From positions 62,001-126,000 of IMG/VR virus record IMGVR_UViG_3300044701_003953: 64,000 bases of DNA; one strand, given 5' to 3'. A program made the translations under genes and the position numbers. The notes under the pieces were generated by a model. It ran no database searches. It had not been told where the DNA came from and saw nothing but the letters and a program-made list of their open reading frames with translations. Shown here piece after piece: positions 40,415 through 55,622 of the stretch (the first letter of the stretch is position 1; every line of letters starts with the position of its first letter).

Positions 40415-40443
40415 CAAAAAAAGCGGCCAGGCCGCTTTTTTTG
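40415..40443. terminator. rho-independent terminator, potentially bidirectional
   Basis: CAAAAAAAGCGGC-CAG-GCCGCTTTTTTTG: perfect inverted repeat with an A-tract before and a T-tract after; ends the structural block. Confidence 0.88.
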
Positions 40444-40470: not shown

Positions 40471-40785
40471 ATGAACGACGTCGACAAACTGATTGGAACC
40501 ATCCGCCAGGCCACTGATTACCAAACGAATCGTAAGATACTCAGGGAGAAGATACAGACTGAATTACATATCACCTACAATGGTGGTATGTTTTTAGTGA
40601 CCAGAGATCTCTTGAGCTTCCTAGCGACTTGGCCAGAACCTACACTTTATCTCGAAGACATATATGAGAACCCCATTGAGATCAACAGAGACGAATTACT
40701 GTATCAATGCCGCCAGAGGTATCAAGCAGTGATGAATTCCTGGCATCAACAACATGCTGAACTACGGAAAATCAGAAAAATCTAG
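40471..40785 (+). CDS. hypothetical protein
   Basis: 104-aa ORF at the head of the accessory operon, overlapping the next gene. Confidence 0.7.
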   Translation: MNDVDKLIGTIRQATDYQTNRKILREKIQTELHITYNGGMFLVTRDLLSFLATWPEPTLYLEDIYENPIEINRDELLYQCRQRYQAVMNSWHQQHAELRKIRKI

Positions 40786-41536
40786 AGGCGCGGTAATATT
40801 CGCCAACAATACCGAAACAGTAGATTATCTTTCTATAGCACAAGCCAATGCTCGATTGATAGATCGATACTTAGGTCTACCTACGACCATACTGACAACA
40901 ACCGATGATACAAAAACGAATCGTCGTTACGATGTTACTAACCAGCAAGTCGTTGAATGGAAAAACTTTGGCAGATCGAAAGCGTTCGATCTCAGCCCAT
41001 ACGATGAGACGTTACTGGTCGACTCGGATTATCTGATCATGGATGATGCGTTTAGTAAAGTCTTTGATGTAATAAACGATTACATGTTGCCGGATAAAAA
41101 TCTCTACGCCACCAACATCGACGTACAAGAGACCATGGGGGAATACAGTCTGCCTTTTGTCTGGGCCACGGCGATATTTTTTAAAAAGACAGATCGTAGT
41201 CGGCAATTATTCGATTTCGTTAAAATGATAGAAAAAAATTATTCTTACTATCGTGCTCTGTACAACATCAAAGATGGTAATTATCGAAACGACTATGCTT
41301 TCGCTATCGCACATTATGTGATCAACGGATACACTATATCTCAACGAGAATTCCTTCCGTGGCCTATCGTGACTGTTCCGGGGGTGTTAGATTCTCTCGT
41401 GTTGGATGATAATAAGTTGACGATCAGGACTCCTGACCGCGCCTATGTTTCTCCTAAACAGAGCATCCACATACTAAGCAAGCACTACCTACAGACACAA
41501 GATTTCCGAGACTTAGTAGAGGCCGCTCTTGCGTAA
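40754..41536 (+). CDS. putative GT-A fold glycosyltransferase (GT8-like)
   Basis: LSPYDETLLVDSDYL (DxD after a hydrophobic strand), RNDYAFAIA. Confidence 0.6.
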   Translation: MLNYGKSEKSRGAVIFANNTETVDYLSIAQANARLIDRYLGLPTTILTTTDDTKTNRRYDVTNQQVVEWKNFGRSKAFDLSPYDETLLVDSDYLIMDDAFSKVFDVINDYMLPDKNLYATNIDVQETMGEYSLPFVWATAIFFKKTDRSRQLFDFVKMIEKNYSYYRALYNIKDGNYRNDYAFAIAHYVINGYTISQREFLPWPIVTVPGVLDSLVLDDNKLTIRTPDRAYVSPKQSIHILSKHYLQTQDFRDLVEAALA

Positions 41537-42404
41537 ACAGCCACATCAAGCACAGGCAGGATTCCTGACATTCGCGCAGAATACCGCGGACGTCGACTAC
41601 TTGCGACTGGCCTATTTGCAGGCGCTAAATATAAAATCAACACAGCGAAACAACCAGTTCGCGATCATAGTCGATTCACAAACAGAAAAAGAAATCACAG
41701 AAAAACAGCGTCGGATATTTGACTTTGTCGTAGTATTAGACGAAGACCACGCACAAGAAGATACTTGGAAGCTCTCTAACGAATGGCAGGCATTTTGGCT
41801 AACCCCATTCAAGGAGACAGTGAAATTAGAATCCGATCTATTGTTCACTCGTAGCATTGATCATTGGTGGCATGCTTTAAGAACACGAGAATTAGTCTTG
41901 AGCCATGGATGTAAAAATTATCTACAGAAAACTTCATTGAATCGTAGATATCGCCGGACGTTCGACGAAACAGGATTACCCGATGTCTATAATGGACTCA
42001 TGTATTTCCGTTTTTCTCGCACAGCATCCACATTCTTCGCCTATGCTCGCGACATATTCCGGAACTGGGATTCAGTGAGAGATCAATGTTTGAAGAATTG
42101 CCGCGACGAAAAGCCTACAACAGACATCGTCTATGCGTTAGCGGCAGAGATCGTGGGTCGAGAAAATTGTACGATACCTAGTCTGGATTTCGTGAATTTC
42201 GTACACATGAAACCATCCATACAAAATTGGCATGGTGATAATGATTGGCAAGACTGTGTAGTATCAGAATTTGATTCTGGAATGATACGAATCAATAATA
42301 TAAATCAGTATCATCCGTTACATTATCAAGATAAGACTTTCCCCACTGATGGAATGATTGATTATTATGAACGACGAATTACCGGCACTGCTGGAAGTAT
42401 TTAA
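41529..42404 (+). CDS. putative GT-A fold glycosyltransferase, paralogue of the upstream gene
   Basis: TTG start with upstream GAGG; LTPFKETVKLESDLL, YNGLMYF, TTDIVYALA, FVHMK. Confidence 0.6.
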   Translation: MRKQPHQAQAGFLTFAQNTADVDYLRLAYLQALNIKSTQRNNQFAIIVDSQTEKEITEKQRRIFDFVVVLDEDHAQEDTWKLSNEWQAFWLTPFKETVKLESDLLFTRSIDHWWHALRTRELVLSHGCKNYLQKTSLNRRYRRTFDETGLPDVYNGLMYFRFSRTASTFFAYARDIFRNWDSVRDQCLKNCRDEKPTTDIVYALAAEIVGRENCTIPSLDFVNFVHMKPSIQNWHGDNDWQDCVVSEFDSGMIRINNINQYHPLHYQDKTFPTDGMIDYYERRITGTAGSI

Positions 42405-42726
42405 AAACCTTCCCGAACTTGTCGAGTCGGAAGTGGAATATCGTCTTTATTACAACGAGGACGGTACTGTTTTATCAATGAGCTCGGGTGATTTTCCTGT
42501 TGAAGGAAAATATATAAAGATCGATAAAGAGATTTACGATCGGCCCAATTATTCGACAATGCGGGTGATCAATGGGAAACTAACCATACTTGAAAATGTT
42601 TCACATCATCGCAATGATCTATATCGCGGAGGCGATAGATTCCTCGTAGTCAAAGGACATGCCAACATATTAGTAGATGACACATACCAAGGAGAAACAG
42701 AAACATATGGCTTCAAGAATCATTGA
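42367..42726 (+). CDS. hypothetical protein
   Basis: 119 aa from ATG 42367; YRLYYNEDG motif; overlaps both neighbours. Confidence 0.65.
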   Translation: MNDELPALLEVFKNLPELVESEVEYRLYYNEDGTVLSMSSGDFPVEGKYIKIDKEIYDRPNYSTMRVINGKLTILENVSHHRNDLYRGGDRFLVVKGHANILVDDTYQGETETYGFKNH

Positions 42727-43639
42727 TGTCGCAGACATAGATTGCATCTATCTCAGTTACGACGAGCCACAGAAGGAAGCGTTCTGGATCAAGATACAGA
42801 ACATGGTACCCTGGGCCAAGCGAGTGGATGGCGTCAAAGGATCCGACGCCGCACACAAGGCCGCCGCTGCCAAGTCTGACACAGAATTTTTCGTGCTCAT
42901 TGACGGAGACAACTTGCCCGACGGTGACTTCTTTAATCTACAACTGGCAGTAGGCGAAGACGAAGCTGATGCTGCCTGGCGCTGGAAAGCCCGCAATCAC
43001 ATCAACGGACTCATGTATGGCAACGGTGGCATGAGTGTGTGGAGCAAGCGGTTTGTGGAAGACATGAAAACCCACGAAGCATCGGATGGCAGCGATCGCA
43101 CAGCAGTGGAGTTCTGTTTCGAACCCAAATACTTTGCCATGCACAACTGCTACTCGACCACTTACCCCAATGGTAGCCCTTACCAAGCATGGCGTGCTGG
43201 ATTCCGTGAAGGCGTCAAGATGTGTCTGGACAAAGGCCGCAAGCCCACGCTACAAGAGTTTGATGACTCAGTGCAACGGCGCAACTTTGACAACCTCTGC
43301 ATCTGGCAGACCGTGGGTCGTGATGTAGAAAACGGTATATGGGCCATCGCAGGAGCACGCCTAGGTACCACTATGACAATGATACATGATTGGGATCACA
43401 GGAACGTACAAGACTTTGATGAGCTTAAAAAGATCTGGGAAGATTGCGTCAAAGATCTAGATCCCGAAGAATTAGCTGCCAAAGAAGGGCAACTGTTACG
43501 CAGTCGACTAGGTATGCCCATCGCAGAGTTTGACGCAGAGCAAAGCAAATTTTTTAAACATCATTACTCTACGGGGCACAAGAACCTAGACATGATGACC
43601 AAAGAGATCGATGTGATCCGTCGTATCGAAGGATGGTGA
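42707..43639 (+). CDS. putative glycosyltransferase (GT-A-like, SYDEP type)
   Basis: DCIYLSYDEP, KRVDGVKG...AHKAAA, FVLIDGDN (DxD), INGLMYGNGG, AWRAGFREGVK; GGAG upstream of ATG 42707. Confidence 0.6.
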   Translation: MASRIIDVADIDCIYLSYDEPQKEAFWIKIQNMVPWAKRVDGVKGSDAAHKAAAAKSDTEFFVLIDGDNLPDGDFFNLQLAVGEDEADAAWRWKARNHINGLMYGNGGMSVWSKRFVEDMKTHEASDGSDRTAVEFCFEPKYFAMHNCYSTTYPNGSPYQAWRAGFREGVKMCLDKGRKPTLQEFDDSVQRRNFDNLCIWQTVGRDVENGIWAIAGARLGTTMTMIHDWDHRNVQDFDELKKIWEDCVKDLDPEELAAKEGQLLRSRLGMPIAEFDAEQSKFFKHHYSTGHKNLDMMTKEIDVIRRIEGW

Positions 43640-45045
43640 TGAATAAAGGCGACGAAGCAGTAGGCAACAAAAGCAAGTTCATGGCTTCAGCCGAGTGGAT
43701 GAAAGAACACCTCGGCGAAGGGTTCTGCTTGGCCAAATGGAAGCAGGTCAGCCTACACTTGCCCACAGGACTCAACAACTCCTGCTACCATCCTCCCTTG
43801 CACCACATCGATCCTGCGCCACTCAAAGATAATCCCGGCGCATTGCACAACACCGAGCACAAGAAACAACAGCGTGTTATCATGCTGAAAAACGAGCGTC
43901 CTGGTGAATGCCAATACTGCTGGAACATCGAAGACACCGGCAATCTCAGCGACAGACATTATCGCAGTGGCGAACCCTGGGCAGCCGAGGACTATGAAGC
44001 CATCCGTGCCTCCGCAGGCACCGAAGACTGGATTCCCAGTTATGTAGAAGTCAACTTCAATCATGCTTGTAATCTGGCCTGCTCGTATTGTAGCCCACAG
44101 TTTTCGTCGACCTGGCAATCGGAAGTAGACAAGTGGGGAGCCTGGCCTACGTCAACTCCACACAACGCACCCGAGCACTTCCAAGGTCGCAATCGTCCCA
44201 TCCCGCACAGCCAAGAGAATCCCTATGTGGATGCTTTCTGGGAATGGTGGCCACAACTGTATCCCAAGTTGAAACATTTCCGCATGACTGGCGGTGAACC
44301 ACTCATGGATCGAAATACCTACAAGGTGTTTGACTATGTGTTAGCCCTGCCCAACCCTGAGCTACATCTCAATGTCACTTCTAACTTCTCTGTGGAACCT
44401 AAACTGTTTGAGAAATATCTCGACTATGTGAAACGCTTGTGTAACACACAGATCGAACACTTCATGCAATATGTGAGCCTAGACACCGGCGAACCTCAGC
44501 ATGCCGAATACATCAGGCATGGGCTCAACTTCCGTCGCATGTGGGATTATGTACATCGCTATCTCGACGAGATCCCGTATCGCAACAGCCTCACATTCAT
44601 TATCACCATGAACAATCTGTCGGTCCTGGGCATACAACGACAACTGGAGTGGATCCTGGATCTGCGGCGCATGTATTCCAAGACCTATCAGCGTGTGTGG
44701 TTTGATACTCCATTGTTGCGCCAGCCTAAATGGCAGAGCCTACAGATACTTCCGCCAGTGTATGCTGACCGACTCGAGCGTGTGGCAGACTGGATGGAAC
44801 TAAACTTAGAAACGCCCGAGGATCCCTTCCACGGTTTCAAAGACTATGAAGTGCAACGCATCCGGCGCGACATCGCGTGGATGCGTGAAGGACAGAAACT
44901 GGATCACGACTACATAGTTGGACAACGTGCCGACTTCTATCGTTTCTTCAATGAACACGACAAGCGTCGTGGCACTGATTTTGAAAGGACTTTCCCTGAG
45001 ATGCGGGAATTTTGGCAGGAGTGCAGATACCATGCCCAACGATAA
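43633..45045 (+). CDS. radical SAM protein with N-terminal twitch-like domain (AKW subtype)
   Basis: FCLAKW...SCYHP...CQYC; CNLACSYC; TGGEP. Confidence 0.9.
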   Translation: MVMNKGDEAVGNKSKFMASAEWMKEHLGEGFCLAKWKQVSLHLPTGLNNSCYHPPLHHIDPAPLKDNPGALHNTEHKKQQRVIMLKNERPGECQYCWNIEDTGNLSDRHYRSGEPWAAEDYEAIRASAGTEDWIPSYVEVNFNHACNLACSYCSPQFSSTWQSEVDKWGAWPTSTPHNAPEHFQGRNRPIPHSQENPYVDAFWEWWPQLYPKLKHFRMTGGEPLMDRNTYKVFDYVLALPNPELHLNVTSNFSVEPKLFEKYLDYVKRLCNTQIEHFMQYVSLDTGEPQHAEYIRHGLNFRRMWDYVHRYLDEIPYRNSLTFIITMNNLSVLGIQRQLEWILDLRRMYSKTYQRVWFDTPLLRQPKWQSLQILPPVYADRLERVADWMELNLETPEDPFHGFKDYEVQRIRRDIAWMREGQKLDHDYIVGQRADFYRFFNEHDKRRGTDFERTFPEMREFWQECRYHAQR

Positions 45046-46117
45046 GTTTTGTGTTCGTCCTTTCATGCACAGTCTTGTTGACACCGAAGGGCGATTCAAA
45101 CCTTGTTGCCGTAGTCAAGTTGACACTGGATTTAATATCAAGTCACATACTGTTGAAGAATGGTGGAACAGCGAATATCTCAATGATTTCCGTGACAGGA
45201 TCAAAAGAAACGAATACAGCAAAGAATGTGACAGGTGCTATCGACAGGAACAGCAAGGATCAAAGAGCTTCCGCGAATACAGCAACGAACGGTGGCCAGA
45301 TGTCAAAACTACTAGAGAAAGACCAATCGATTGGGAGATACAGTTATCAAATCTTTGCAATTTGAAATGTTTGATGTGTAACCCACAATCCAGTAGCCAG
45401 TTCTTAGTAGAAGAAAATAAGCTATTTGGAAAAAAGTGGGATCAAACCAAATACGATTGGGATGCCAAAGACAACAGCAAGATACTCGAGATAATGCAAC
45501 AAAGCGAGAGTTTCATCCTACGAGGCGGAGAACCGTTTATGTTGCCGTGGGTAAAGGACATCATCTCATCGTTAGCAGATCGAAAAGAAATAATGATAGC
45601 TACCAACGGCACTCGGTTCGATCAAAGTTGGCTTGACGTCCTTTCGGGGCACGACATCAAGATTTGTCTGAGCCTTGACGGGCACGGAAAACTCAATCAT
45701 TACATACGCTATCCTAGTAAATGGAATGACATACTGGATAACATCAAATTGATGCGGAAGATCCCAGGTGTGAATCTTTTCGTGAACACCGTAGTCCAAA
45801 ATCTCAACGTGTTACACATCGACCGATTGTTAGACTGGACCAAGGGCGAAGAGTTATTTGTGCAATTCGATATACTAACTAAACCTAAATATCTAGAACC
45901 GTCGTGCTTACCTGCCGAGTTGGCTAAACTCGCACAAGACCGTCTGGGCAGAGTTGATCACCAATCTCAGAATGGGCTCGAAGGGATAATCAATACTTTA
46001 GATAATGCCACAGATGAGTATTGGGAAGAATTCGTGGAAACTATAACTATCAGAGATAGACATCGTGGCGTAGATATAGTAAACTATATACCCGAGATGG
46101 AGCCATACTTTGCCTAG
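45032..46117 (+). CDS. radical SAM protein with N-terminal twitch-like domain
   Basis: Start reassigned to ATG 45032 (AGGAG upstream); FCVRPF...PCC...CDRC; CNLKCLMC; GGEP; ATNGT; LSLDG. Confidence 0.9.
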   Translation: MPNDKFCVRPFMHSLVDTEGRFKPCCRSQVDTGFNIKSHTVEEWWNSEYLNDFRDRIKRNEYSKECDRCYRQEQQGSKSFREYSNERWPDVKTTRERPIDWEIQLSNLCNLKCLMCNPQSSSQFLVEENKLFGKKWDQTKYDWDAKDNSKILEIMQQSESFILRGGEPFMLPWVKDIISSLADRKEIMIATNGTRFDQSWLDVLSGHDIKICLSLDGHGKLNHYIRYPSKWNDILDNIKLMRKIPGVNLFVNTVVQNLNVLHIDRLLDWTKGEELFVQFDILTKPKYLEPSCLPAELAKLAQDRLGRVDHQSQNGLEGIINTLDNATDEYWEEFVETITIRDRHRGVDIVNYIPEMEPYFA

Positions 46118-47462
46118 ACTACATAATGAAACTGACCTAGAATTCCGGAAACGTGTGCTCGATTCTAAGAGTGCTAGTTTCTGTGGAGCCAAATGGTACA
46201 ACGCTACCATATGGTTAGGCTCCGGCATGACCACATCCTGTCATCACCCTCCTGCGCATTTCGTGCCAGTGGAGGCCATCCAACGTAACCCCAAGGCGCT
46301 ACATAACAGCGACGAAAAGAAAAACGACCGCGCCATGATGCAACGTGGCGAACGTCCACCCGGTTGTGAGTATTGCTGGAAGATCGAAGACATGGGTCGT
46401 GATGCTGTTTCAGACCGTGTCTATAAAAGCGTGATCTACACCGACGAGGAACTCAATGAAGCTTATCTATTACCCACCGCTGAGGACGCAAATCTACGCA
46501 CTCTCGAAATCAGTTTCGATCGTACTTGCCAATTGGCTTGTAGCTACTGTAATCCTGCTTTCTCTTCTACATGGGTTAAGGACATTAAAACCCGAGGGCC
46601 TTATATCGAGTTGGTTAGTGATGGTAGGAATCACTTCACTCATGATCACGCTAGTGCTCAACTTTATCGATACGGTGAAGTCAATCCGTATGTTGAGGCA
46701 TTTTTCCGCTGGTGGGAAACCGACCTACATAAGACGCTTAGAGAGTTACGGATCACCGGAGGAGAACCACTCATGTCCGGCTACACCTGGCAACTCATCG
46801 ACTGGTTCAAACAAAACCGCGGCAAGTCAAACACACGCCTAGCCATCAACTCCAACTTGGCTATGCCGTCGGATCGTATACAAGAACTCCTAGATGCTTG
46901 CGAGGGTATCGAACTGGATATCTATACTTCCAACGAAGCACTACATTCGCAGGCCGAATACATCAGAGACGGGCTCCAATGGCAACAATGGCAAACCAAC
47001 ATGCGTTTGTTGGCCTCCAGTGGTAGGCTACGGGGCTTACACAACATGTGTACTATCAACGCATTGTGTCTCGAATCATTGCCTGAGTTCTTGGATTTCT
47101 TGGTAGAGATGAAACGAGAGTTTGGCAGAGATTTCCCCAACTTCACGCTAAACATCCTGCGTTTTCCGTCGTTCCAAAGCCCTTTGGTGTTGCCTGATGA
47201 CATACGTGAACACCACAAGCAGAGACTAGTTGAGTGGATGGTCAAGCACAAAGGCCACAGCTATCTACATCAGCATGAGATAAACCATGTGCTAAGATTG
47301 ATAGATTATCTAGATGTAGTCAAGACTCCGCACCGCGAGACTTTTGAGCGTCCAGCCCTACACAACGACTTCCGTAAATTCTACGAACAATACGATCAGC
47401 GTAGGGGTAAAAATTTCCCCGAAACATTTCCTGGCCTAGCCGACTGGTATTCCACACTATGA
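46110..47462 (+). CDS. radical SAM protein with N-terminal twitch-like domain (AKW subtype)
   Basis: TTG start with GGAG; FCGAKW...SCHHP...CEYC; CQLACSYC; TGGEP. Confidence 0.9.
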   Translation: MPRLHNETDLEFRKRVLDSKSASFCGAKWYNATIWLGSGMTTSCHHPPAHFVPVEAIQRNPKALHNSDEKKNDRAMMQRGERPPGCEYCWKIEDMGRDAVSDRVYKSVIYTDEELNEAYLLPTAEDANLRTLEISFDRTCQLACSYCNPAFSSTWVKDIKTRGPYIELVSDGRNHFTHDHASAQLYRYGEVNPYVEAFFRWWETDLHKTLRELRITGGEPLMSGYTWQLIDWFKQNRGKSNTRLAINSNLAMPSDRIQELLDACEGIELDIYTSNEALHSQAEYIRDGLQWQQWQTNMRLLASSGRLRGLHNMCTINALCLESLPEFLDFLVEMKREFGRDFPNFTLNILRFPSFQSPLVLPDDIREHHKQRLVEWMVKHKGHSYLHQHEINHVLRLIDYLDVVKTPHRETFERPALHNDFRKFYEQYDQRRGKNFPETFPGLADWYSTL

Positions 47463-48790
47463 GTGATACAAAAGATTTCTACAACAAGGGCTACGACTAC
47501 AATAGTCGGGCACCTTATTTCGTCGAGCGCAAAGACTTGACACCCGAGCAGTGGCGCAAGCTCACGGAGAGCGATACCTTCTGTATGTTACCTTGGATGC
47601 ACATGCACGCCTTCCCAGATGGTCGTGCTTATCCCTGCTGTCTCAGCGAATACTTCCACCCCGTAGGCGATCTGCGCAAACACACCATGGAAGAAGTATG
47701 GAACCAAGAAAAGTATCGCACCATGCGTCAGAACATGCTCACGGATAAGCCATGTAAAGAATGTACTAAGTGCTATGAGCAAGAGAAGGCTGGATTCTTT
47801 TCTATGCGCAATGATGCCAACAGGAACTACGGGCATCATATCTCAGACATACATAAGACACAACCAGATGGAACACACCCCGACTTCAAGATCCGTTATT
47901 GGGACGTACGATTCAGCAATCTCTGTAACATGAGATGTCGTAGCTGTGGCCCTATCTTTTCGTCGAACTGGTTCAATGACCATGTCAAGATGTATGGCGT
48001 AGTGCCCGATGTACTCAAACGACCCATGGCCAGGGTAGAATATACTACCGGCGACGAGGATGGCATGTTGGCACAGATGGAGCCACATATCCCTTATCTC
48101 GAACAAGTCTACTTCGCAGGTGGCGAACCGCTGATCATGAAAGAGCACTACTACATGCTGGAGAAGTTGATCGAAGCCGGCAAGACTGATGTGCGACTGA
48201 TCTACAACACCAATTTCTCAGAACTGCGCTACAAAGACAAACATGTGTTTGAGTTCTGGAAACACTTCAAAACAGTGAATGTGGGCGCCAGCCTAGATGC
48301 TTCGGGCGCCCGGGCCGAGCTCATGCGCAAAGGCACTGAGTGGACGCAGACCGTGGACAACCGCCGCAGGATGATGGAGGAAGTGCCGCATGTGGACTTC
48401 TATGTCAGCGCCACGGTATCCTCGATGAATGTGCTACATGTGTTAGACTTCCATCGCGAATGGAGCGAACTGGGCCTGATCCGCCCCAAGGACTTCAATG
48501 TCAATATCTGCCAAAGTCCTGAATGGTACAGGATCGACATCTTCCCCGAAGCGTTCAAGCGAGAAGTCATCGAACCTGCTTACCGTAGACACATCGAGTG
48601 GCTTGATCCGCAGGACACGCTACGCCGTGCTACCACTGGATTCGAAAGCGCCATCAACTTCATGATGAGCACAGACAACAGCCATCTCTTGCCACGCTGG
48701 AGAGAAGAGACCGCCAAGTTGGATCGCGTGAGGGACGAAGACTTTTGGAAGACCTTCACAGAATTGGAGACACTACGTGACTCTGCCTAA
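47459..48790 (+). CDS. radical SAM protein with N-terminal twitch-like domain
   Basis: FCMLPW...PCC...CTKC; CNMRCRSC; AGGEP; YNTN; ASLD. Confidence 0.9.
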   Translation: MSDTKDFYNKGYDYNSRAPYFVERKDLTPEQWRKLTESDTFCMLPWMHMHAFPDGRAYPCCLSEYFHPVGDLRKHTMEEVWNQEKYRTMRQNMLTDKPCKECTKCYEQEKAGFFSMRNDANRNYGHHISDIHKTQPDGTHPDFKIRYWDVRFSNLCNMRCRSCGPIFSSNWFNDHVKMYGVVPDVLKRPMARVEYTTGDEDGMLAQMEPHIPYLEQVYFAGGEPLIMKEHYYMLEKLIEAGKTDVRLIYNTNFSELRYKDKHVFEFWKHFKTVNVGASLDASGARAELMRKGTEWTQTVDNRRRMMEEVPHVDFYVSATVSSMNVLHVLDFHREWSELGLIRPKDFNVNICQSPEWYRIDIFPEAFKREVIEPAYRRHIEWLDPQDTLRRATTGFESAINFMMSTDNSHLLPRWREETAKLDRVRDEDFWKTFTELETLRDSA

Positions 48791-49991
48791 GACCATCTGT
48801 ATGCTACCATGGATGAGCATCGAGACTTCGCCAATGGGTACAGCTCGGCCTTGCTGTCTTGCTGACGAAGAGATCACTGATGCCAATGGTGTCAAATATG
48901 ATCTCAATGTCAGCACACTGCGCGAAGTCTATGACAGCGAATACATGCAGGAACTGAGACGTCAATTCCGTCGAGGTGAAAAACCCAAGACATGTAATCG
49001 TTGCTGGGAAGAGGAAGCCGCTGGAAGGACCAGCAAGCGTATACACAGCCGTGTACGACTCAAAGAACTCTATGCCCAAGTGGACTGGGAAAATGATCGA
49101 CCTGACCAACTCTGGTTCGTAGATCTCAAACTAGGTAACATTTGTAATCTCAAATGCCGTATCTGCGGATCCTGGAGTTCCAGCAAGTGGGCTGAAGAAG
49201 AGATGAACTACTTGCCCAAGACCGTGGACAAGAAAACACACATCGCTTACACCTGGCTCAAGCAAGGACAATGGCCCCGCAAGACCGAGACCTTCTGGGA
49301 TGACCTGCGCGGACTCTTGCCCAACATTCGCTACTTTGAATTCACTGGTGGCGAACCCTGGTTGATCCAAGAGCACATCGACCTGCTCAAGTTCGCTGTG
49401 GAGACCGGCGACAGTCATCACATCGACATACACTACAACACCAATGCCACACAATGGCCCGACGATCTGGTAGAGATCTGGAAAGACTTCGGACGGGTGG
49501 ACATCGCCTTTAGCATCGACAATGTGGGAGAGCGTTTCGAGTTTGAGCGTTTCCCTGCCGACTGGAACAAAGCCAATGAGATCGTGGATGCCGTTCATGC
49601 GTTACAAAAGACGCACACCAACATCACTACCCAACTGTGCTTCACGCTCAACATACAGAATGTTTACTACCTCGATGAGTTGCTGGCCTGGGCAGACACC
49701 AAAGGCTTTGACAACATCTACTTCAACATGCTACATAGTCCCAGCCGCATGAGCATACAGTCCATGACGCCAGTGGCGCAAGAGTTGGTAGTTGGTAAAC
49801 TACGCAACACCGATTGGCGCACTGAATACCAACGCGAAGTTGATAATGTCATCAACTTCATTGAGAACGGTGCAGGTAGCGACGGGCGTGAGTTTTGCCG
49901 TCTCATGAAGCAGACTGACGCTTACCGTAAGCAAGACTTCGCCACCACACACCCTGAGATAGCAAAGGCCATGGGATATGAACAAACCTGA
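48777..49991 (+). CDS. radical SAM protein with N-terminal twitch-like domain
   Basis: GTG start with GGAG; ICMLPW...PCC...CNRC; CNLKCRIC; TGGEP; YNTN; FSID. Confidence 0.9.
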   Translation: MTLPKTICMLPWMSIETSPMGTARPCCLADEEITDANGVKYDLNVSTLREVYDSEYMQELRRQFRRGEKPKTCNRCWEEEAAGRTSKRIHSRVRLKELYAQVDWENDRPDQLWFVDLKLGNICNLKCRICGSWSSSKWAEEEMNYLPKTVDKKTHIAYTWLKQGQWPRKTETFWDDLRGLLPNIRYFEFTGGEPWLIQEHIDLLKFAVETGDSHHIDIHYNTNATQWPDDLVEIWKDFGRVDIAFSIDNVGERFEFERFPADWNKANEIVDAVHALQKTHTNITTQLCFTLNIQNVYYLDELLAWADTKGFDNIYFNMLHSPSRMSIQSMTPVAQELVVGKLRNTDWRTEYQREVDNVINFIENGAGSDGREFCRLMKQTDAYRKQDFATTHPEIAKAMGYEQT

Positions 49992-51282
49992 ACATCGTCC
50001 CGCGACACTTTGTATGGCACCGTGGACTCACACATATCTGAGTCCACAGACTGAGCGCCGGATGTGCTGTGCTAGTCGTGAACCTGCACAGAACTTCCAG
50101 CAGTATATTGATACAGCTGCTGGTACAGGAAAATATATTCCCATTACCTTGGACGAGCATTGGAACGGCGAGCACATGAAGAGTGTGAGACGCCGAATGA
50201 TGACCGGCGAGACTTTGCCCGAATGCGATGTGTGTAACAGCAAGCTCTTGAACACAGACGTTTACCGTAGTTATTTTAACCATCTTTTCGGACATAAGTA
50301 TAATAGCATATGGGACTCTACTGACGAGACCGGAAATACTACTATGCAGCCAGTGAGTTGGGATTACAGGTTTTCCAACTTGTGTAACTTCAAATGCAGA
50401 ACCTGTGGAGACATGTTAAGCAGTGCTTGGGAGTCTGAGCAACGCCAACACAACATGATCGACTGGACCAATCCCAAGAATCAGTGGATGGTCCCTGAAA
50501 TCAAAAAGCAAATTGAAGGTTTTCAAAATGAACAGGTAGAGGCCGAGTTTTCACAGGCCGTTGAGGAGCACCGAGTCGAAGAAGTCTACTGGGTTGGCGG
50601 CGAGCCACTCATGTACGAACAGCATTGGCGATACATGAAACGTATCGTTGACTTGGGAGATGGACAAAATGTTTACGCTAGATACAACACAAATCTTAGT
50701 AGGATTGATTATAGAGGTATTAATCTTTATCGGGATATTCTTAGTAGGTTACGGGATTGGCAAATCTGTGCAAGCATCGACGGATCGGGCCGAATTGGTG
50801 AATATATTCGAACAGGTCTCGATTTTAGTCGGTGGCTTGAGAACTTCAAACAAGGAGTTGAAATCAGTACTCATAAACGCCAGATGCGTATTGACTTCAC
50901 TCTTACACTCCCGGGTCTCTTCGAAGTTCGACAGATGACCCAGCTCGGGCAGGAACTGGGTGTTGACACATTAGCCAAAGTCATATTCAGTTTCTCGCCC
51001 GACATCATACTCAGTCCATTGGCCTTGCCAAGGGAGTTACTAGAACCCTGGTTAGACGAACTCATACCCGATACACATGGCGCCATGCAGGATATTTTGG
51101 TACAACTCAAAGCACGACCTACGTTCCAAGAACAGTGGCCCGATCAGTGGCAAGCGGGTCTTGCGAAAGGCAAGGCTCGTGTGTTAAAATTAGAACAGAT
51201 CAGAAATGACGATTACACCATGGACGACATATTAAGCCAGCGTCCAGAGGTACATAAATGGTGGAGAAACATCGATGCTTGA
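49978..51282 (+). CDS. radical SAM protein with N-terminal twitch-like domain
   Basis: LCMAPW...MCC...CDVC; CNFKCRTC; VGGEP; YNTN; ASIDG. Confidence 0.9.
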   Translation: MNKPEHRPATLCMAPWTHTYLSPQTERRMCCASREPAQNFQQYIDTAAGTGKYIPITLDEHWNGEHMKSVRRRMMTGETLPECDVCNSKLLNTDVYRSYFNHLFGHKYNSIWDSTDETGNTTMQPVSWDYRFSNLCNFKCRTCGDMLSSAWESEQRQHNMIDWTNPKNQWMVPEIKKQIEGFQNEQVEAEFSQAVEEHRVEEVYWVGGEPLMYEQHWRYMKRIVDLGDGQNVYARYNTNLSRIDYRGINLYRDILSRLRDWQICASIDGSGRIGEYIRTGLDFSRWLENFKQGVEISTHKRQMRIDFTLTLPGLFEVRQMTQLGQELGVDTLAKVIFSFSPDIILSPLALPRELLEPWLDELIPDTHGAMQDILVQLKARPTFQEQWPDQWQAGLAKGKARVLKLEQIRNDDYTMDDILSQRPEVHKWWRNIDA

Positions 51283-51463: not shown

Positions 51464-52531
51464 ATGAAAAAAGTCAAGATAGTACTGAGAGATCCTCTCA
51501 ACAAGCAGGATCAGATCGATTACGACATCGAAGTCGAAGATCATGAAATGGCCGTGCGCTGGCACGATGCTTTATGTGATCTGCTTCGTAACGACAATTA
51601 CTTAGAAAAGAATTTTTGTTTTTTGGGCTTTCCTAACACAGCTAGGAATCTCGATTTCCTTTGCCGCGAGCTAGACTGGGCCAAGACGAAGATAAATTCT
51701 TTCTTCGACGATTATCGTATAGAAGAAGAATACCGTCCTGATACGCTGAGACATGGCCTCGATCCCAATCAGGATCTGATGAACTTGTTACACAATCATT
51801 TTGAAGTGTTACAAGGAACAGTATGGGGACTCAGCGAATACTACAAGAGAGCCGACTACGAAACCAAGTTTGCTATCCGCCAACTCAACAACATCTGCCA
51901 CGAAGCAGAAAGCCTAATGTTGAGCCAACGCAAACAAGTAGAAGCACCCGAGTGGGTGCGTCCTAGCCAGATAACTACGTTCTTAAACGCACCTCGTTTC
52001 GAGTATCCTCGAGAGTATAAACGTACATTCAACGAAACACGTTACGACCGTACCTTTGGTACAGTATATCAGCATTGGACACAGATCGGCAAGACCTTGT
52101 ACGAAGTCTATATCGACGAGAACGGTGCCGATATCGATCAAGCCACCTGCGAGGCCATCACGCACCTGCGATACTATTCGGGAGAATTTGATATCGAATG
52201 GGCACGTGATGTCACACACGGTGGCGAGTATCCGTGGCATACCAAACGTATGACTGGATTCCGCGAGTGGCTAGTCCGCAACGGGTTTGATCTCGACGAT
52301 GTGGAATACAACTACGGGTATCACTCAGTGGGGCAAGTCGATCTGCGTGGTGGCTTTGGCACGGATGACTATCAGACGATATGGAATACATTAGGACAGC
52401 ATCTCGACATAGTAAAGATCGAAACCGCTGGATTTTCGTCTACTTACGATTACTGCTGGACCGACGAAGATTATTATCAACAACAGATCGATAGATTGAA
52501 ACCTGGTTATGATTATAGTAGCAGGCGGTGA
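51464..52531 (+). CDS. hypothetical protein
   Basis: 355 aa abutting the previous stop; LHNHFE and QLNNICHEAE motifs; no confident domain. Confidence 0.7.
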   Translation: MKKVKIVLRDPLNKQDQIDYDIEVEDHEMAVRWHDALCDLLRNDNYLEKNFCFLGFPNTARNLDFLCRELDWAKTKINSFFDDYRIEEEYRPDTLRHGLDPNQDLMNLLHNHFEVLQGTVWGLSEYYKRADYETKFAIRQLNNICHEAESLMLSQRKQVEAPEWVRPSQITTFLNAPRFEYPREYKRTFNETRYDRTFGTVYQHWTQIGKTLYEVYIDENGADIDQATCEAITHLRYYSGEFDIEWARDVTHGGEYPWHTKRMTGFREWLVRNGFDLDDVEYNYGYHSVGQVDLRGGFGTDDYQTIWNTLGQHLDIVKIETAGFSSTYDYCWTDEDYYQQQIDRLKPGYDYSSRR

Positions 52532-53078
52532 CAGTTTCGTCTGGGGCAGCGAACTCCCAGATAGCCCGCACGGTGGGCCTAATGGATACAGTAGATCTAC
52601 TTTTCCTGCGCTACTGGCCCGCGGTTACAGTTATACCTGCTTGGCCTATCCCGGTATTGGTAACAAAGAAATCTCACAGAGAGTGCGGGATTTTTTATCA
52701 TCTTCAGAAGTCAACGATTTGATAATGATAGTCTGTTGGACATGGCCCACACGAGATGGAGTATTGGATAGCGACGAGGATATATTGGCATTACAACAGG
52801 CACTCGAAGATCGTGGAATACCTTATATTTTTACTTGCGCGGATAACTGTATAAAGACCGAGAACAAAGCGATAAAATGGGATGAATGGTTTTGGTTCCC
52901 GCCTGCGCATATCACTGAGCTATATGGGACTCACAGCCCAAGAGGTTTTTACCAGTGGGCGAGAGAAAATAAATATTCAGTAGGACCCGAGTGCCATCCA
53001 TTAGTTGACGCACATCAAGATGCCGCAAAGTTAATCCAAGGAAAATTCGATGAACTGGTTAAAAAGATTGATCAATAA
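52509..53078 (+). CDS. SGNH/GDSL-like hydrolase or acyltransferase
   Basis: GGDSF near the N-terminus, PGIGN, C-terminal HPLVDAH. Confidence 0.65.
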   Translation: MIIVAGGDSFVWGSELPDSPHGGPNGYSRSTFPALLARGYSYTCLAYPGIGNKEISQRVRDFLSSSEVNDLIMIVCWTWPTRDGVLDSDEDILALQQALEDRGIPYIFTCADNCIKTENKAIKWDEWFWFPPAHITELYGTHSPRGFYQWARENKYSVGPECHPLVDAHQDAAKLIQGKFDELVKKIDQ

Positions 53079-53151
53079 GATCCGATCAGAAATACAATAC
53101 CGTAAAAAACTCAAAGAAATGCGAAAGCGCGATCCTTTCATTTATAAATGA
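53050..53151 (+). CDS. 33-aa basic microprotein (not in ORF track)
   Basis: MNWLKRLINKIRSEIQYRKKLKEMRKRDPFIYK*; AAGGA upstream; ATGA overlap with the next gene. Confidence 0.65.
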   Translation: MNWLKRLINKIRSEIQYRKKLKEMRKRDPFIYK

Positions 53152-53702
53152 TATTAGTAAATGGCGATAGTTTCACTGCCGGAGAAGAAAGCACTGTAGC
53201 ATGGCCGGACCTTGTGCCCGATACCGTGAACATAGCGGTGTCTGGAGCTGGCAACGATCATATCGTCACTAGCACGATCGTCCACGTCGAAACGCACGAT
53301 GACGTCGATCATGCTATAATAGCATGGACCACACCACATAGGATAACGATCAGTGGAAAACATCTTACTCCCACTAGCCAGAGGAAATACGGAAAGTTAG
53401 TAGACGAGGTATTCCGTGACTGGGACGAAGATTGGGCCTGGAGGAAATTCCGAGCCGAAGTGGCCGCATTACATGGTTATCTCGAACACAAAGGTATCCC
53501 ACATGTGTTTGTGAGCACATTTGGGATACCCTCTAATACTATACCTGACTGCTTGTACTGGCTGGGGTGGGGAACAGAAGGCATGGTGGAATGGATGGGC
53601 GATTGCCCCAAAGGCCCAGGTGGGCATCCTTTAGAACTTGGACATCAAAGAATAGCAGGAAAAATCAATGAACATATTAGGAATATCGGCTGGATTTCAT
53701 GA
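53148..53702 (+). CDS. SGNH/GDSL-like hydrolase or acyltransferase
   Basis: NGDSF, NIAVSGAGN, GHPLELGHQRIA. Confidence 0.7.
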   Translation: MILVNGDSFTAGEESTVAWPDLVPDTVNIAVSGAGNDHIVTSTIVHVETHDDVDHAIIAWTTPHRITISGKHLTPTSQRKYGKLVDEVFRDWDEDWAWRKFRAEVAALHGYLEHKGIPHVFVSTFGIPSNTIPDCLYWLGWGTEGMVEWMGDCPKGPGGHPLELGHQRIAGKINEHIRNIGWIS

Positions 53703-55197: not shown

Positions 55198-55622
55198 TCA
55201 AAAAAATATTGATAATGGGATTACCCGGATCAGGTAAAAGCACATTAGCTGAACCCTTCGCCAAGCTCATCGGTGGGGTATGGCTCAATGCCGACGCAGT
55301 CCGCACCGAATACGACGATTGGGATTTCTCTCCCGAAGGCCGCATGAGGCAAGCCATGAGGATGCGATATCTCGCCGACGGTGTCGCCAAGGCAGGTAAG
55401 ATAGCAGTGGCCGACTTTGTATGTCCTACAGAAAAAGCTCGTGCTGAGTTTGGAGCAGATTATGTGATCTGGATGGACACTATCAAAGAAGGACGCTTCG
55501 AAGACACCAACAAGATGTTTGAACCGCCATCAAGATTCGATTATCATGTTGAAAGTTGGTTCACAGACACGCACGAACAACTAGCTAAGGTAGTAACCAA
55601 ATATATCGGAGATATCAAATGA
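55194..55622 (+). CDS. adenylylsulfate (APS) kinase-like P-loop kinase
   Basis: GLPGSGKST, LNADAVR, DFSPEGR, ADFVCP, FEPP resemble CysC; ATGA coupling to the carbamoyltransferase. Confidence 0.72.
   Translation: MIKKILIMGLPGSGKSTLAEPFAKLIGGVWLNADAVRTEYDDWDFSPEGRMRQAMRMRYLADGVAKAGKIAVADFVCPTEKARAEFGADYVIWMDTIKEGRFEDTNKMFEPPSRFDYHVESWFTDTHEQLAKVVTKYIGDIK

What the first reader, a model, noticed from the sequence alone, without database searches (positions are those of the whole stretch)
43633..51282. Six consecutive, translationally coupled radical SAM paralogues with inverted architecture
Seen: each has C-x2-(P/K)-(W/F)...C(C/H/Y)...CxxC before the CxxxCxxC core, and each overlaps the next by 4-14 nt. 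Two more of this type lie at 846 and 4896, so 8 of the 9 radical SAM genes in the window share it. Known: SPASM/twitch auxiliary-cluster domains are normally C-terminal; as I recall, an N-terminal-twitch family of unknown function exists in NCBIfam. Inference: keeping so many divergent, intact, Fe-S-costly enzymes implies distinct sequential reactions or a hetero-oligomer, not redundancy.
Basis: partly seen in the sequence, partly recalled or inferred. Interest (0 to 1): 0.8.

Follow-up and report, generated by a model that had tools for sequence, protein, structure and literature searches.

The report
Phage array of sugar-tailoring radical enzymes
A large freshwater phage carries six back-to-back, very different copies of an uncharacterised iron-sulfur "radical SAM" enzyme inside a sugar-chain-building gene island, and related phages keep five of them, which points to a multi-step radical chemistry for making unusual sugars that nobody has yet studied.

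Summary
Six overlapping + strand genes (43633-51282), plus two more at 846 and 4896, all pass NCBIfam NF033640 (N-terminal-twitch radical SAM) at 228-396 bits against a cut-off of 170. They share only 17-37% identity.

In about 30 distinct related viral contigs, R1, R3, R4, R5 and R6 each form a one-per-genome clade in fixed order. Their dN/dS is 0.03-0.07. R2 sits in a variable slot.

In other lineages neighbouring types are fused in array order (R4+R5, R5+R6, R1+R3). So the copies are non-redundant and functionally coupled.

The N-terminal domain's only PDB sequence match is the C-terminal twitch of BtrN, a radical carbohydrate dehydrogenase, with all four cysteines aligned.

The array follows three glycosyltransferase-like genes without any intergenic gap. 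Downstream lie SGNH-like genes, a carbamoyltransferase, and sugar aminotransferase and epimerase genes. Relatives insert nucleotide-sugar enzymes between the rSAM genes. Cellular homologues sit in O-antigen-type clusters, and some are fused to GT4 glycosyltransferases.

Best reading (about 0.55): a phage-encoded glycan island in which each paralogue does a distinct BtrN-like radical step on a sugar. The chemistry, the substrate and the glycan's destination are not shown. The family is catalogued but uncharacterised.

The parts
40415..40443 (.). Strong bidirectional intrinsic-terminator-like hairpin that separates the tail-fibre-like genes from the island
   Evidence: 13-bp stem with 6 GC pairs and T runs on both strands
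40471..40785 (+). Small ORF (104 aa), first gene of the gap-free block; function unknown
   Evidence: ORF list; no Pfam hit
40754..41536 (+). up3: GT8-like glycosyltransferase paralogue with invariant D90 and D92
   Evidence: hhalign against up2: probability 98.8%, E 6.5e-17; syntenic in relatives; invariant columns
41529..42404 (+). up2: GT8 (glycogenin-like) glycosyltransferase-like protein
   Evidence: Orthologue profile hits glycogenin-1 in the PDB at E 7e-6; syntenic
42358..42726 (+). up1b: small conserved ORF (about 120 aa) with no cysteines; function unknown
   Evidence: tblastn synteny; gene called in a public contig
42677..43639 (+). up1: GT-A-fold (GT2-like) glycosyltransferase-like protein with an invariant D-G-D; overlaps R1 by 7 nt
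   Evidence: AF2 model, pLDDT 77; all top Foldseek PDB hits are GT-A glycosyltransferases at weak E of about 1e-3; invariant D76, G77, D78; 46% identical even in the distant lineage L036
43633..45045 (+). R1: N-terminal-twitch radical SAM; conserved positional lineage, sister to R3
   Evidence: NF033640 at 305.7 bits; clade support 100; dN/dS 0.03
45032..46117 (+). R2: N-terminal-twitch radical SAM in a variable slot; found only in the closest relatives
   Evidence: NF033640 at 281.9 bits; present in L002 and L032 only, plus a distant L031 copy; a co-occurring variant contig departs from the window across R2
46110..47462 (+). R3: N-terminal-twitch radical SAM; conserved positional lineage
   Evidence: NF033640 at 299.5 bits; clade 100; dN/dS 0.05-0.07
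47459..48790 (+). R4: N-terminal-twitch radical SAM; conserved positional lineage
   Evidence: NF033640 at 395.9 bits; AF2 pLDDT 94.3; clade 100; dN/dS 0.03-0.04
48777..49991 (+). R5: N-terminal-twitch radical SAM; conserved positional lineage, with Rb as its nearest paralogue
   Evidence: NF033640 at 338.1 bits; 37% identical to Rb; the 28-row R5 clade has SH-aLRT 97, and that clade plus Rb has 100
49978..51282 (+). R6: N-terminal-twitch radical SAM; conserved positional lineage
   Evidence: NF033640 at 287.3 bits; clade 100; dN/dS 0.06-0.07
51464..52531 (+). dn1: conserved protein of unknown function that always follows R6
   Evidence: Synteny; no Pfam, NCBIfam, PDB-profile or Atlas match
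52509..53078 (+). dn2: SGNH/GDSL-like protein with an N-terminal GDSF motif; paralogue of dn3
   Evidence: BLASTP against dn3 at E 3e-5; only sub-threshold DUF6071 hits in its orthologues
53148..53702 (+). dn3: SGNH/GDSL-like (DUF6071) protein
   Evidence: Orthologues hit PF19547 at 38-43 bits (cut-off 27) and Lipase_GDSL_2 below its cut-off
53668..55197 (+). NodU/CmcH-type carbamoyltransferase
   Evidence: Pfam Carbam_trans_N and Carbam_trans_C, E 1e-37 to 1e-48
55188..55622 (+). Small P-loop kinase, APS-kinase-like
   Evidence: PF01583 at 33.8 bits, cut-off 21.1
55619..56032 (+). Possible small nucleotidyltransferase (weak evidence)
   Evidence: NCBIfam nicotinamide-nucleotide adenylyltransferase at E 3.9e-5, far below its cut-off
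59771..60943 (-). DegT/DnrJ/EryC1 sugar aminotransferase
   Evidence: PF01041 at E 2.7e-76
60828..61799 (-). NAD-dependent sugar epimerase/dehydratase
   Evidence: PF01370 at E 5.8e-44
846..2153 (-). Ra: seventh N-terminal-twitch radical SAM, downstream of the gp46 homologue
   Evidence: NF033640 at 228.4 bits
4896..6497 (-). Rb: eighth N-terminal-twitch radical SAM, with a ~130-aa N-terminal extension, inserted between the gp47 and gp46 homologues
   Evidence: NF033640 at 321.4 bits; flanking genes hit Metallophos and AAA_23/SMC_N
2143..3114 (-). Rc: ninth radical SAM, without the N-terminal twitch
   Evidence: Pfam Radical_SAM only; NF033640 at 41 bits, below its cut-off

Best explanation
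The six genes are non-redundant members of the N-terminal-twitch radical SAM family (NF033640). They are encoded in a glycan-building and glycan-tailoring island of a large freshwater T4-superfamily myovirus.

What each enzyme is (shown by sequence): each has a canonical CX3CX2C site for SAM cleavage. Each also has a BtrN-type twitch domain with four cysteine ligands, moved to the N-terminus. Four ligands imply one fully ligated auxiliary [4Fe-4S] cluster that would act as an electron conduit (inferred).

What the enzymes do (inferred):
- Each paralogue abstracts a hydrogen from a different carbon, or a different sugar, of a nucleotide-activated or carrier-linked sugar.
- The most likely reaction is a BtrN-like oxidation of a secondary alcohol to a ketone, or a related dehydration or epimerisation.
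- This creates handles for the co-encoded aminotransferase, carbamoyltransferase, SGNH-type acyl enzymes and kinase.
- The three upstream glycosyltransferase-like proteins assemble or transfer the product.

How the enzymes relate to each other: the five conserved enzymes (R1, R3, R4, R5, R6) work as one pathway and probably associate physically. R2 and the other slot genes are swappable extras that vary the final sugar.

Where the glycan ends up is not shown. I favour the phage's own virion proteins (fibres) over the host envelope.
For: Shown by tools:
- Family membership of all eight copies.
- Four conserved N-terminal Cys.
- The profile of the N-terminal domain has one meaningful PDB hit, BtrN residues 169-239. 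That is BtrN's C-terminal twitch, and all four Cys align.
- Divergence of 17-37% identity.
- One-per-genome positional clades in fixed order across about 30 distinct loci.
- dN/dS of 0.03-0.07.
- Fusions join R4-like+R5-like, R5-like+R6-like and R1-like+R3-like modules in array order. Other fusion clusters (R1+R3-like P0127, P0132, P0134) recur in several independent contigs.

Sugar context in the window:
- There is no intergenic gap from 40471 to 51282. The block begins after a strong terminator.
- up2 and up3 are GT8-like. up1 has a GT-A fold with an invariant D-G-D.
- Carbamoyltransferase, APS-kinase-like kinase, DegT aminotransferase and NAD epimerase/dehydratase are present.
- SGNH-like dn2 and dn3 are present.

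Sugar context in relatives: genes inserted between the rSAM genes include an epimerase/dehydratase, a UDP-glucose dehydrogenase, DegT and class-III aminotransferases, a hexapeptide acyltransferase and further rSAMs.

Sugar context in cellular organisms:
- Homologues are fused to GT4 glycosyltransferase or CBM_4_9 domains.
- All seven neighbourhoods inspected hold at least one glycosyltransferase, Wzm/Wzt-type ABC exporter, NDP-sugar enzyme or UbiA prenyltransferase gene; five of them hold glycosyltransferases.
- They include arrays of two and four N-twitch rSAMs, a carbamoyltransferase and a GDSL gene.

From my own knowledge: in butirosin biosynthesis the BtrN keto product is transaminated by a DegT-family enzyme. 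That is the same pairing of enzyme types seen here.
Against: - No member of NF033640 has a reported activity in the searched literature.
- The sugar assignment is guilt by association plus domain fusions.
- The BtrN match is marginal (E 0.014) and covers only the twitch domain. BtrN is not among the top 50 fold matches to the whole R4 model. Those matches are generic rSAM cores with TM at or below 0.37, and they include peptide maturases.
- The glycosyltransferase calls for up1, up2 and up3 rest on weak or partial matches.
- Ra and Rb lie in the recombination module next to gp46/gp47, not in the island.
- No expression data could be found.
- Nothing in the window shows which molecule receives the glycan.
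Confidence: 0.55

Rival explanations
1. The enzymes are protein or peptide maturases, as most SPASM/twitch rSAMs are. They would install cross-links, epimerisations or oxidations on virion proteins such as the neighbouring fibre proteins or the 4716-aa structural protein, or on a small precursor peptide.
For: The best whole-model fold matches include the sactipeptide, streptide and sulfatase maturases CteB, SuiB and anSME. Weak NCBIfam hits to many peptide maturases were found, especially for R2 and Rb. The array lies a few kb downstream of fibre-like genes. Small unexplained ORFs (40471, up1b) are in the same block.
Against: No RRE/PqqD-type recognition domain was found, and no maturase model comes near its cut-off. 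Cellular homologues are fused to GT4/CBM domains and sit in polysaccharide clusters, not RiPP clusters. Genes interleaved in the array are NDP-sugar enzymes. A strong terminator separates the block from the fibre genes. up1b has no Cys, and no repeat or leader-core pattern was evident in its sequence.
Confidence: 0.15
2. The enzymes act on nucleotides or on phage DNA. They would either make hypermodified, sugar-decorated bases, or viperin-like modified nucleotides used in conflict with the host.
For: Every paralogue gives a weak hit to the prokaryotic viperin model, and viperin structures are among the fold matches. Glycosyltransferases in T4-type phages classically glycosylate DNA (own knowledge). 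Rb and Ra sit beside the recombination genes gp46/gp47. Thymidylate synthase and DHFR border the island.
Against: Viperin-model scores are 16-45 bits against a cut-off of 180. Viperins have no auxiliary cluster (own knowledge). The ThyA-DHFR pair is the ordinary T4 td-frd arrangement (own knowledge). The cellular contexts are surface-polysaccharide clusters with exporters (not applicable; see 99-102). No DNA-base-modifying enzyme was identified in the block.
Confidence: 0.1
3. The real substrate is a polyprenyl or other lipid carrier, or a lipid-linked sugar, rather than a soluble NDP-sugar. The enzymes would remodel a glycolipid that the host then exports, changing the host surface, for example to exclude other phages.
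For: UbiA prenyltransferase and/or a polyprenyl synthetase accompany the family in four of seven cellular contexts, together with ABC exporters. The top fold hit is the lipid-modifying GDGT-MAS. The pelagimyophage literature proposes host O-chain remodelling for glycosyltransferases in the equivalent region (PMC7029224).
Against: No UbiA, flippase, exporter or membrane protein was recognised in the phage island. GDGT-MAS matches only the core, at TM 0.28. This rival overlaps the main explanation: it keeps the chemistry and changes the carrier and the destination.
Confidence: 0.12
4. The copies are redundant or decaying duplicates with no distinct roles.
For: None beyond the multiplicity itself.
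Against: Identity is 17-37%. All frames are intact with all seven cluster cysteines. dN/dS is 0.03-0.07. One orthologue of each of the five types is retained in about 30 distinct loci.
Confidence: 0.02

Closest known systems
BtrN (butirosin 2-deoxy-scyllo-inosamine dehydrogenase), the founding twitch radical SAM enzyme; PDB 4M7S/4M7T
   Same: The twitch domain aligns over about 70 residues, with all four auxiliary-cluster cysteines in register. BtrN is the only meaningful PDB sequence hit of the N-terminal domain profile. BtrN acts on a carbohydrate-like substrate, and its pathway uses a DegT-type aminotransferase (own knowledge).
   Different: In BtrN the twitch follows the core, whereas here it precedes it. 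The proteins here are 360-530 aa against about 250 aa for BtrN. No whole-protein sequence hit was found, and BtrN is not among the top 50 fold matches. The activity here is unknown.
NCBIfam NF033640 'twitch domain-containing radical SAM protein': cellular members in bacteria and archaea
   Same: All eight window proteins pass the curated cut-off. Architecture and cysteine pattern are the same. Cellular members also occur in tandem arrays of two to four and next to carbamoyltransferase, GDSL and glycosyltransferase genes.
   Different: Cellular members are about 20-25% identical to the phage copies. They carry C-terminal extensions or GT4/CBM fusions and sit with UbiA, AsnB and ABC exporters, which are absent from the phage island. 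The family has no characterised member in the searched literature.
C-terminal SPASM/twitch radical SAM enzymes (anSME, CteB, SuiB, MoaA, BlsE)
   Same: They share the partial TIM-barrel rSAM core plus a cysteine-rich auxiliary Fe-S domain. The Pfam SPASM model matches the N-terminal domain end to end in R2, R4 and R5. These enzymes are the best fold matches.
   Different: The domain order is permuted. There are only four auxiliary cysteines (one cluster, i.e. twitch rather than SPASM). There is no RRE. Fold similarity is limited to TM at or below 0.37.
Radical SAM cassettes in the 'host recognition cluster' of marine T4-like myophages (PMC7029224), and the T4-like environmental genome with 12 radical SAM genes (PMC5332604)
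   Same: In those phages too, rSAM genes accumulate with glycosyltransferases between the giant baseplate/virion protein and the rest of the structural module. Their multiplicity was noted.
   Different: Those papers only mention the genes. They give no family assignment, orthology, selection analysis, fusion evidence or mechanism. The phage here is from freshwater, and its baseplate protein is nearest to those of jumbo myoviruses.
Virus-encoded glycan pathways that decorate virions (chloroviruses, mimivirus fibrils, mycobacteriophage capsids); from my own knowledge, not tested here
   Same: A virus carries its own sugar-nucleotide tailoring enzymes and glycosyltransferases next to structural genes.
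   Different: As far as I know, none of those systems uses arrays of radical SAM enzymes. Whether the glycan here goes onto the virion is unknown.

Membership tests
NCBIfam NF033640 (N_Twi_rSAM) | Whole-protein HMM score at or above the curated cut-off of 170 bits | tested here: met
   R1 305.7, R2 281.9, R3 299.5, R4 395.9, R5 338.1, R6 287.3 bits; Ra 228.4, Rb 321.4 bits. Rc scores 41 bits and is not a member.
NCBIfam NF033640 (N_Twi_rSAM) | Cysteine-rich twitch domain placed N-terminal to the CX3CX2C core | tested here: met
   Cysteine positions. Pfam SPASM matches residues of about 6-105, ahead of Radical_SAM. The domain aligns to BtrN's twitch.
Radical SAM superfamily | CX3CX2C motif plus the GGEP SAM-binding motif in a partial TIM barrel | tested here: met
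   Motifs are present in all eight. GGE is invariant and P nearly so in 110 sequences. The R4 model has pLDDT 94 and matches rSAM cores.
Radical SAM superfamily | Binds [4Fe-4S] clusters and reductively cleaves SAM | not testable with these tools
   This needs anaerobic purification, Fe/S analysis, EPR and 5'-deoxyadenosine assays.
Twitch subclass (one auxiliary cluster), as opposed to SPASM (two) | Four conserved auxiliary cysteines rather than seven or eight | tested here: met
   Only C42, C61, C102 and C105 (R4 numbering) are conserved outside the core motif.
Canonical SPASM/twitch architecture | Auxiliary-cluster domain C-terminal to the core | tested here: not met
   The domain is N-terminal in all eight. 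No conserved C-terminal cysteines were found.
BtrN-type carbohydrate dehydrogenase | Homology of the whole enzyme and the same reaction | tested here: inconclusive
   The twitch domain matches at E 0.014. The core gives no sequence hit, and BtrN is absent from the top 50 fold hits. The reaction is untested.
RiPP-maturing rSAM/SPASM enzymes | RRE (PqqD-like) domain or score above an equivalog cut-off, with an adjacent precursor peptide | tested here: not met
   No RRE hit was found. Maturase models score 18-45 bits against cut-offs of 265-650. No recognisable precursor gene is present.
Viperin family (NF038283) | Score at or above 180 bits | tested here: not met
   Scores are 16-45 bits.

The most novel reading that the evidence does not exclude
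The five conserved paralogues would form a heteromeric radical 'assembly line'. Natural two- and three-module fusions in the same order hint at this. The assembly line would carry out several successive C-H activations on one sugar or glycan, producing a heavily tailored glycan class unknown from cellular biochemistry. Large aquatic phages would use it to coat their fibres or virions. This would define the function of a family with thousands of sequence clusters that appears to be expanded mainly in phages.
Probability: 0.3. Interest if true: 0.85.

Novelty: new variant of a known kind. Interest (0 to 1): 0.68.

Why it matters
NF033640 is a large family. A profile of the eight window paralogues finds 7,788 clusters (at 50% identity) at E<=1e-30. 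No activity has been reported for it in the searched literature. The clusters nearest to the phage copies are almost all viral.

This work shows four things:
- Phages keep five distinct lineages of the family together under strong purifying selection.
- In other lineages, neighbouring types are fused in array order.
- In phages and cells alike, the family is embedded in sugar-nucleotide and glycosyltransferase contexts.
- The N-terminal domain is a permuted BtrN-type twitch.

Together these turn an anonymous annotation into a testable hypothesis about radical carbohydrate chemistry. They also offer an explanation for the unexplained 'many radical SAM genes' noted in marine T4-like phage genomes.

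If the glycan decorates virions or host surfaces, it bears on host recognition and phage competition in freshwater and marine systems. It would also add new reactions to the toolbox for making rare sugars.

Tried and rejected
- **Cultured-phage match.** Megablast of the array against 50,697 GenBank phage records found nothing. tblastn of R4 found only four distant phage records at 21-23% identity: Ralstonia RsoM2USA, Vibrio K566 and K567, and a marine SAG virus. Their annotations are uninformative.
- **Scan of bacterial genomes.** The genome-contig scan was therefore never run. Cellular contexts came instead from a plasmid tblastn hit and seven look-ups by exact protein.
- **R4 against solved structures.** phmmer of R4 against the PDB found no hit. 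Foldseek gave only generic rSAM cores.
- **Neighbouring unknowns.** The Atlas was uninformative for up1 and dn1. PDB profiles of dn1 and up3 found nothing.
- **Literature.** Searches for an N-terminal twitch or SPASM, or for rSAM in O-antigen or fibre contexts, found no characterisation.
- **Expression.** No RNA run was listed for R4, so expression and operon structure could not be checked with reads.
- **Promoters.** The T4 late-promoter motif TATAAATA does not occur in the window, against 2.7 expected by chance. Sigma-70-like sites are at chance level.
- **tRNAs.** None were found that could hint at the host.
- **Cysteine-dependent epimerase.** I rejected this as a common mechanism. No extra cysteine is conserved across the paralogues beyond the seven cluster ligands.
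- **Model geometry.** I could not measure the distance between the two predicted cluster sites.

Full report
**What is in the sequence**

The region 43633-51282 holds six + strand ORFs of 361-470 aa. I call them R1 to R6. Taking the ATG at 45032 for R2, successive genes overlap by 14, 8, 4, 14 and 14 nt.

R3 starts at a TTG and R5 at a GTG. Both starts are needed to include the first conserved cysteine. Both, like R2, have a GGAG 8-11 nt upstream. A public gene caller chose later starts for R3, R5 and R6 that would cut off the N-terminal domain. The exact overlaps therefore depend on start choice, but the frames are contiguous either way.

Each protein has, in order:
- C-x2-(P/K)-(W/F)
- a C(C/H/Y) pair 18 residues later
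- a CxxC about 40 residues after that
- the CX3CX2C radical SAM motif
- GGEP

Runs from two freshwater samples of different studies contain contigs identical to the window across all five junctions. One of these samples may be the source of the window.

**Family**

All six score 282-396 bits on NCBIfam NF033640, 'twitch domain-containing radical SAM protein', whose cut-off is 170. The genes at 846-2153(-) and 4896-6497(-), which I call Ra and Rb, score 228 and 321 bits.

Pfam places its SPASM model end to end on the N-terminal 65-80 residues of R2, R4, R5, Ra and Rb, ahead of Radical_SAM.

A motif scan finds nine CX3CX2C radical SAM ORFs in the window. The ninth, Rc (2143-3114, -), lacks the N-terminal domain.

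**The N-terminal domain is a permuted BtrN-type twitch**

I built a profile from the eight N-terminal domains. It has a single meaningful hit among 177,635 PDB sequences: BtrN residues 169-239 (E 0.014). That segment is BtrN's C-terminal twitch. All four cysteines and the W-N...R...G signature are in register.

Outside the core motif, only four cysteines are conserved across the eight paralogues and across a 110-sequence family alignment. This fits one fully ligated auxiliary cluster, meaning twitch rather than SPASM.

The R4 AlphaFold model is very confident (pLDDT 94.3, pTM 0.91). It matches solved structures only as a generic rSAM core. The hits are GDGT-MAS, CteB, BlsE, viperin, anSME and DesII, with TM at or below 0.37 and E 1e-5 to 1e-3. 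No close structure has been solved.

**The copies are not redundant**

- The paralogues share 17-37% identity. R1 is closest to R3 (30%) and R5 to Rb (37%).
- A scan of IMG/VR with R4 returned 41 loci. The window itself is IMGVR_UViG_3300044701_003953, 207.5 kb.
- Mapping all window proteins onto these loci shows a conserved order: up3-up2-up1b-up1-R1-[slot]-R3-R4-[slot]-R5-[slot]-R6-dn1-dn2-dn3-carbamoyltransferase.
- There are five to seven N-twitch rSAM genes per locus, and three in a distant lineage (L036-L038).
- I built a maximum-likelihood tree of 156 such proteins from 26 non-duplicate loci. R1, R3, R4 and R6 each form an SH-aLRT 100 clade with one member per locus; the R5 clade has 97, and 100 with Rb attached. 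R1 and R3 fall together in one weakly supported group (SH-aLRT 88) that also holds a third small clade; that fork is unresolved. Rb attaches to the R5 clade.
- R2 occurs only in the two closest relatives, plus one distant copy. It occupies a variable slot. A co-occurring variant contig in the same samples departs from the window exactly across R2.
- Where synonymous sites are not saturated, dN/dS between the window and L002 or L032 is 0.03-0.07 for R1, R3, R4, R5 and R6. That is as low as for up1 and the carbamoyltransferase.

**Coupling between neighbours**

A profile of the eight paralogues, searched against 1.84 billion cluster representatives, finds 7,788 clusters at E<=1e-30. The top of the list is dominated by proteins with two or three complete modules.

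I split these and compared each module with the window paralogues. The fusions follow the array order:
- R4-like then R5-like: P0121 (56% and 48% identity), P0122, P0125, P0128, P0130, P0139
- R5-like then R6-like: P0124
- R1-like then R3-like: P0127, P0204

Several fusion clusters recur in independent assemblies. P0127 has four full-length members. P0132 is seen on 26 contigs. P0121 is one uninterrupted ORF on its contig.

This is Rosetta-stone evidence that neighbouring enzymes act together. It does not tell a stable complex from a pathway.

**The surroundings are a glycan island**

The left side of the window holds:
- a gp55-like late sigma factor
- gp47 and gp46 homologues, with Rb inserted between them
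- baseplate hub, gp25-like and gp6-like proteins
- a 4716-aa virion protein
- a collagen-like fibre and two fibre-like proteins

A strong bidirectional terminator lies at 40415-40443. After it, genes run without any intergenic gap from 40471 to the end of R6.

| Gene or group | Assignment | Evidence |
|---|---|---|
| up2 | GT8-like (profile hits glycogenin at E 7e-6) | |
| up3 | paralogue of up2 (hhalign 98.8%) | |
| up1 | GT-A fold; every top PDB hit is a GT-A glycosyltransferase (RmlT, BcsA, SunS, hyaluronan synthase, TarP) but at weak E of about 1e-3; invariant D-G-D | |
| dn1 | conserved, no recognisable relative | |
| dn2, dn3 | SGNH/GDSL-like paralogues | |
| 53668-55197 | NodU/CmcH-type carbamoyltransferase | |
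| 55188-55622 | APS-kinase-like P-loop kinase | |
| 55619-56032 | possible small nucleotidyltransferase (weak) | |
| 59771-60943 (-) | DegT/DnrJ/EryC1 aminotransferase | |
| 60828-61799 (-) | NAD-dependent sugar epimerase/dehydratase | |

I also looked at 75 ORFs that relatives carry in the variable slots between the conserved genes. Seventeen are further rSAMs. The others with a Pfam match are nucleotide-sugar enzymes: an epimerase/dehydratase, a UDP-glucose/GDP-mannose dehydrogenase, DegT and class-III aminotransferases, a hexapeptide acyltransferase and a B12-rSAM.

**Cellular relatives point the same way**

A Methylomagnum plasmid gene, annotated 'twitch domain-containing radical SAM protein', lies among GT39, GT2 and GT4 glycosyltransferases, a polyprenyl synthetase, AsnB, UbiA and an ABC transporter.

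Its homologues come from Bacteroidota, Bdellovibrionales, Vicinamibacteria and archaea. They include fusions to GT4 glycosyltransferase domains and to the CBM_4_9 carbohydrate-binding module.

| Locus | Neighbouring genes |
|---|---|
| L048 | Wzm/Wzt exporter, many glycosyltransferases, polysaccharide deacetylases |
| L049 | GT2 plus a dTDP-sugar pathway |
| L053 | GT4, AsnB, UbiA, GDSL and two tandem N-twitch rSAMs |
| L054 | UbiA, glycosyltransferases and four N-twitch rSAMs in a row |
| L055 | ABC exporter, carbamoyltransferase, B12-rSAM |
| L056 | UbiA, AsnB, epimerase |

Arrays of paralogues are therefore not unique to phages. However, the clusters nearest to the phage copies are almost entirely viral.

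**Mechanism proposed**

Shown here:
- membership of an rSAM family with a permuted, four-cysteine, BtrN-like twitch
- non-redundancy and co-inheritance of five lineages
- fusion of neighbouring types in array order
- embedding among sugar-nucleotide enzymes and glycosyltransferases, in phages and in cells

Inferred:
- Each enzyme uses the 5'-deoxyadenosyl radical to abstract a hydrogen from a particular sugar carbon.
- The auxiliary cluster relays the second electron, as proposed for BtrN (own knowledge).
- This gives keto-sugars, or related dehydrated or epimerised products.
- The island's aminotransferase, carbamoyltransferase, SGNH enzymes and kinase then elaborate these products. The GT8-like and GT-A-like proteins transfer them.
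- The pairing of an rSAM dehydrogenase with a DegT-family aminotransferase has a precedent in butirosin biosynthesis (own knowledge).

The destination of the glycan is open. The position next to structural genes suggests virion decoration. So do known cases of virus-encoded virion glycosylation (own knowledge). The pelagimyophage literature favours host O-chain remodelling (PMC7029224).

I put about 0.55 on the sugar-tailing reading overall, meaning sugar tailoring by these enzymes. Peptide or protein maturation, nucleotide or DNA modification, and lipid-linked substrates remain as rivals.

**Relation to what is known**

The family is catalogued (NF033640), but I found no paper on its activity or on an N-terminal twitch.

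Two genomics papers mention in passing that marine T4-like phages carry many rSAM genes. One reports 12 in a single genome (PMC5332604). The other notes rSAM cassettes in the 'host recognition cluster' (PMC7029224).

The phage here is from freshwater. The same locus sits on contigs of 207 kb and 338 kb. Its gp6-like baseplate protein is nearest, at 35-37%, to those of jumbo myoviruses such as Erwinia pEa_SNUABM_47, Agrobacterium Atu_ph07 and Serratia BF.

I rate the finding as a new variant of a known kind. It is a twitch-type radical SAM carbohydrate-tailoring system, but with permuted architecture, deployed as a conserved multi-paralogue array in phages.

**Limits**

- No expression data were found.
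- No model coordinates were available to measure the distance between cluster sites.
- The glycosyltransferase assignments rest on weak or partial matches.
- The BtrN alignment is statistically marginal, although it is specific.

Noticed in passing
window 3107-7510 (-): An N-twitch rSAM with a ~130-aa N-terminal extension (Rb, 4896-6497) is inserted between the gp47-like (6494-7510) and gp46-like (3107-4882) recombination nuclease genes, overlapping gp47 by 4 nt. Two further rSAMs (Rc 2143-3114, Ra 846-2153) follow gp46. A viral-contig scan with Rb found only one other locus, at 69% identity.
   Followed up: partly
window 18976-33126 (+): A single 4716-aa ORF matches a virion structural protein family (phrog_10938, 1104 bits) just after the gp6-like baseplate gene. 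It coincides with the lowest-GC stretch of the window (0.40-0.42 against 0.45-0.51 elsewhere). It may be the VrlC-type giant baseplate protein described for marine T4-like phages; I did not test this.
   Followed up: no
window 45032-46117; read laying joint 45039->46179: In both freshwater samples that hold the phage, a second, less abundant contig skips from the end of R1 to the start of R3. This suggests that R2 is present, absent or replaced among co-occurring strains. What lies between the two ends in that contig is not known.
   Followed up: partly
P0121-P0163 (metagenomic proteins); L050:1807-4224: Dozens of cluster representatives are single polypeptides holding two or three complete N-twitch rSAM modules. 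One is a 1203-aa three-module protein (P0123) from an NCBI record.
   Followed up: partly
window 51464-52531 (+): dn1 is a 355-aa protein that always follows R6. It has many invariant residues (His, Cys, Glu, Trp) but no match in Pfam, NCBIfam, PHROGs, a PDB profile search or the ESM Atlas.
   Followed up: partly
whole window: A gp55-like late sigma factor is encoded at 7517-8467 (-), yet the T4 late-promoter motif TATAAATA does not occur once in 64 kb, against 2.7 expected by chance. The late promoters of this phage group probably differ from T4's.
   Followed up: no
L001 / L042 (contigs holding the window): The identical locus lies on a 207,520-bp IMG/VR contig and on a 337,740-bp JGI contig. 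Relatives lie on contigs of up to 366 kb. Either this is a jumbo phage or one of the assemblies is chimeric or concatenated.
   Followed up: no
L054:8001-13851 and L053:6354-9605: Bacterial genomes also hold tandem arrays of four and of two N-twitch rSAM genes. They recur with UbiA prenyltransferase, an AsnB-like amidotransferase and glycosyltransferases. This gene set is not present in the phage island.
   Followed up: partly
window 55188-56032 (+): A 144-aa APS-kinase-like P-loop kinase is followed, with a 4-nt overlap, by a 137-aa ORF with weak nucleotidyltransferase similarity. This pair could activate a sugar phosphate.
   Followed up: no
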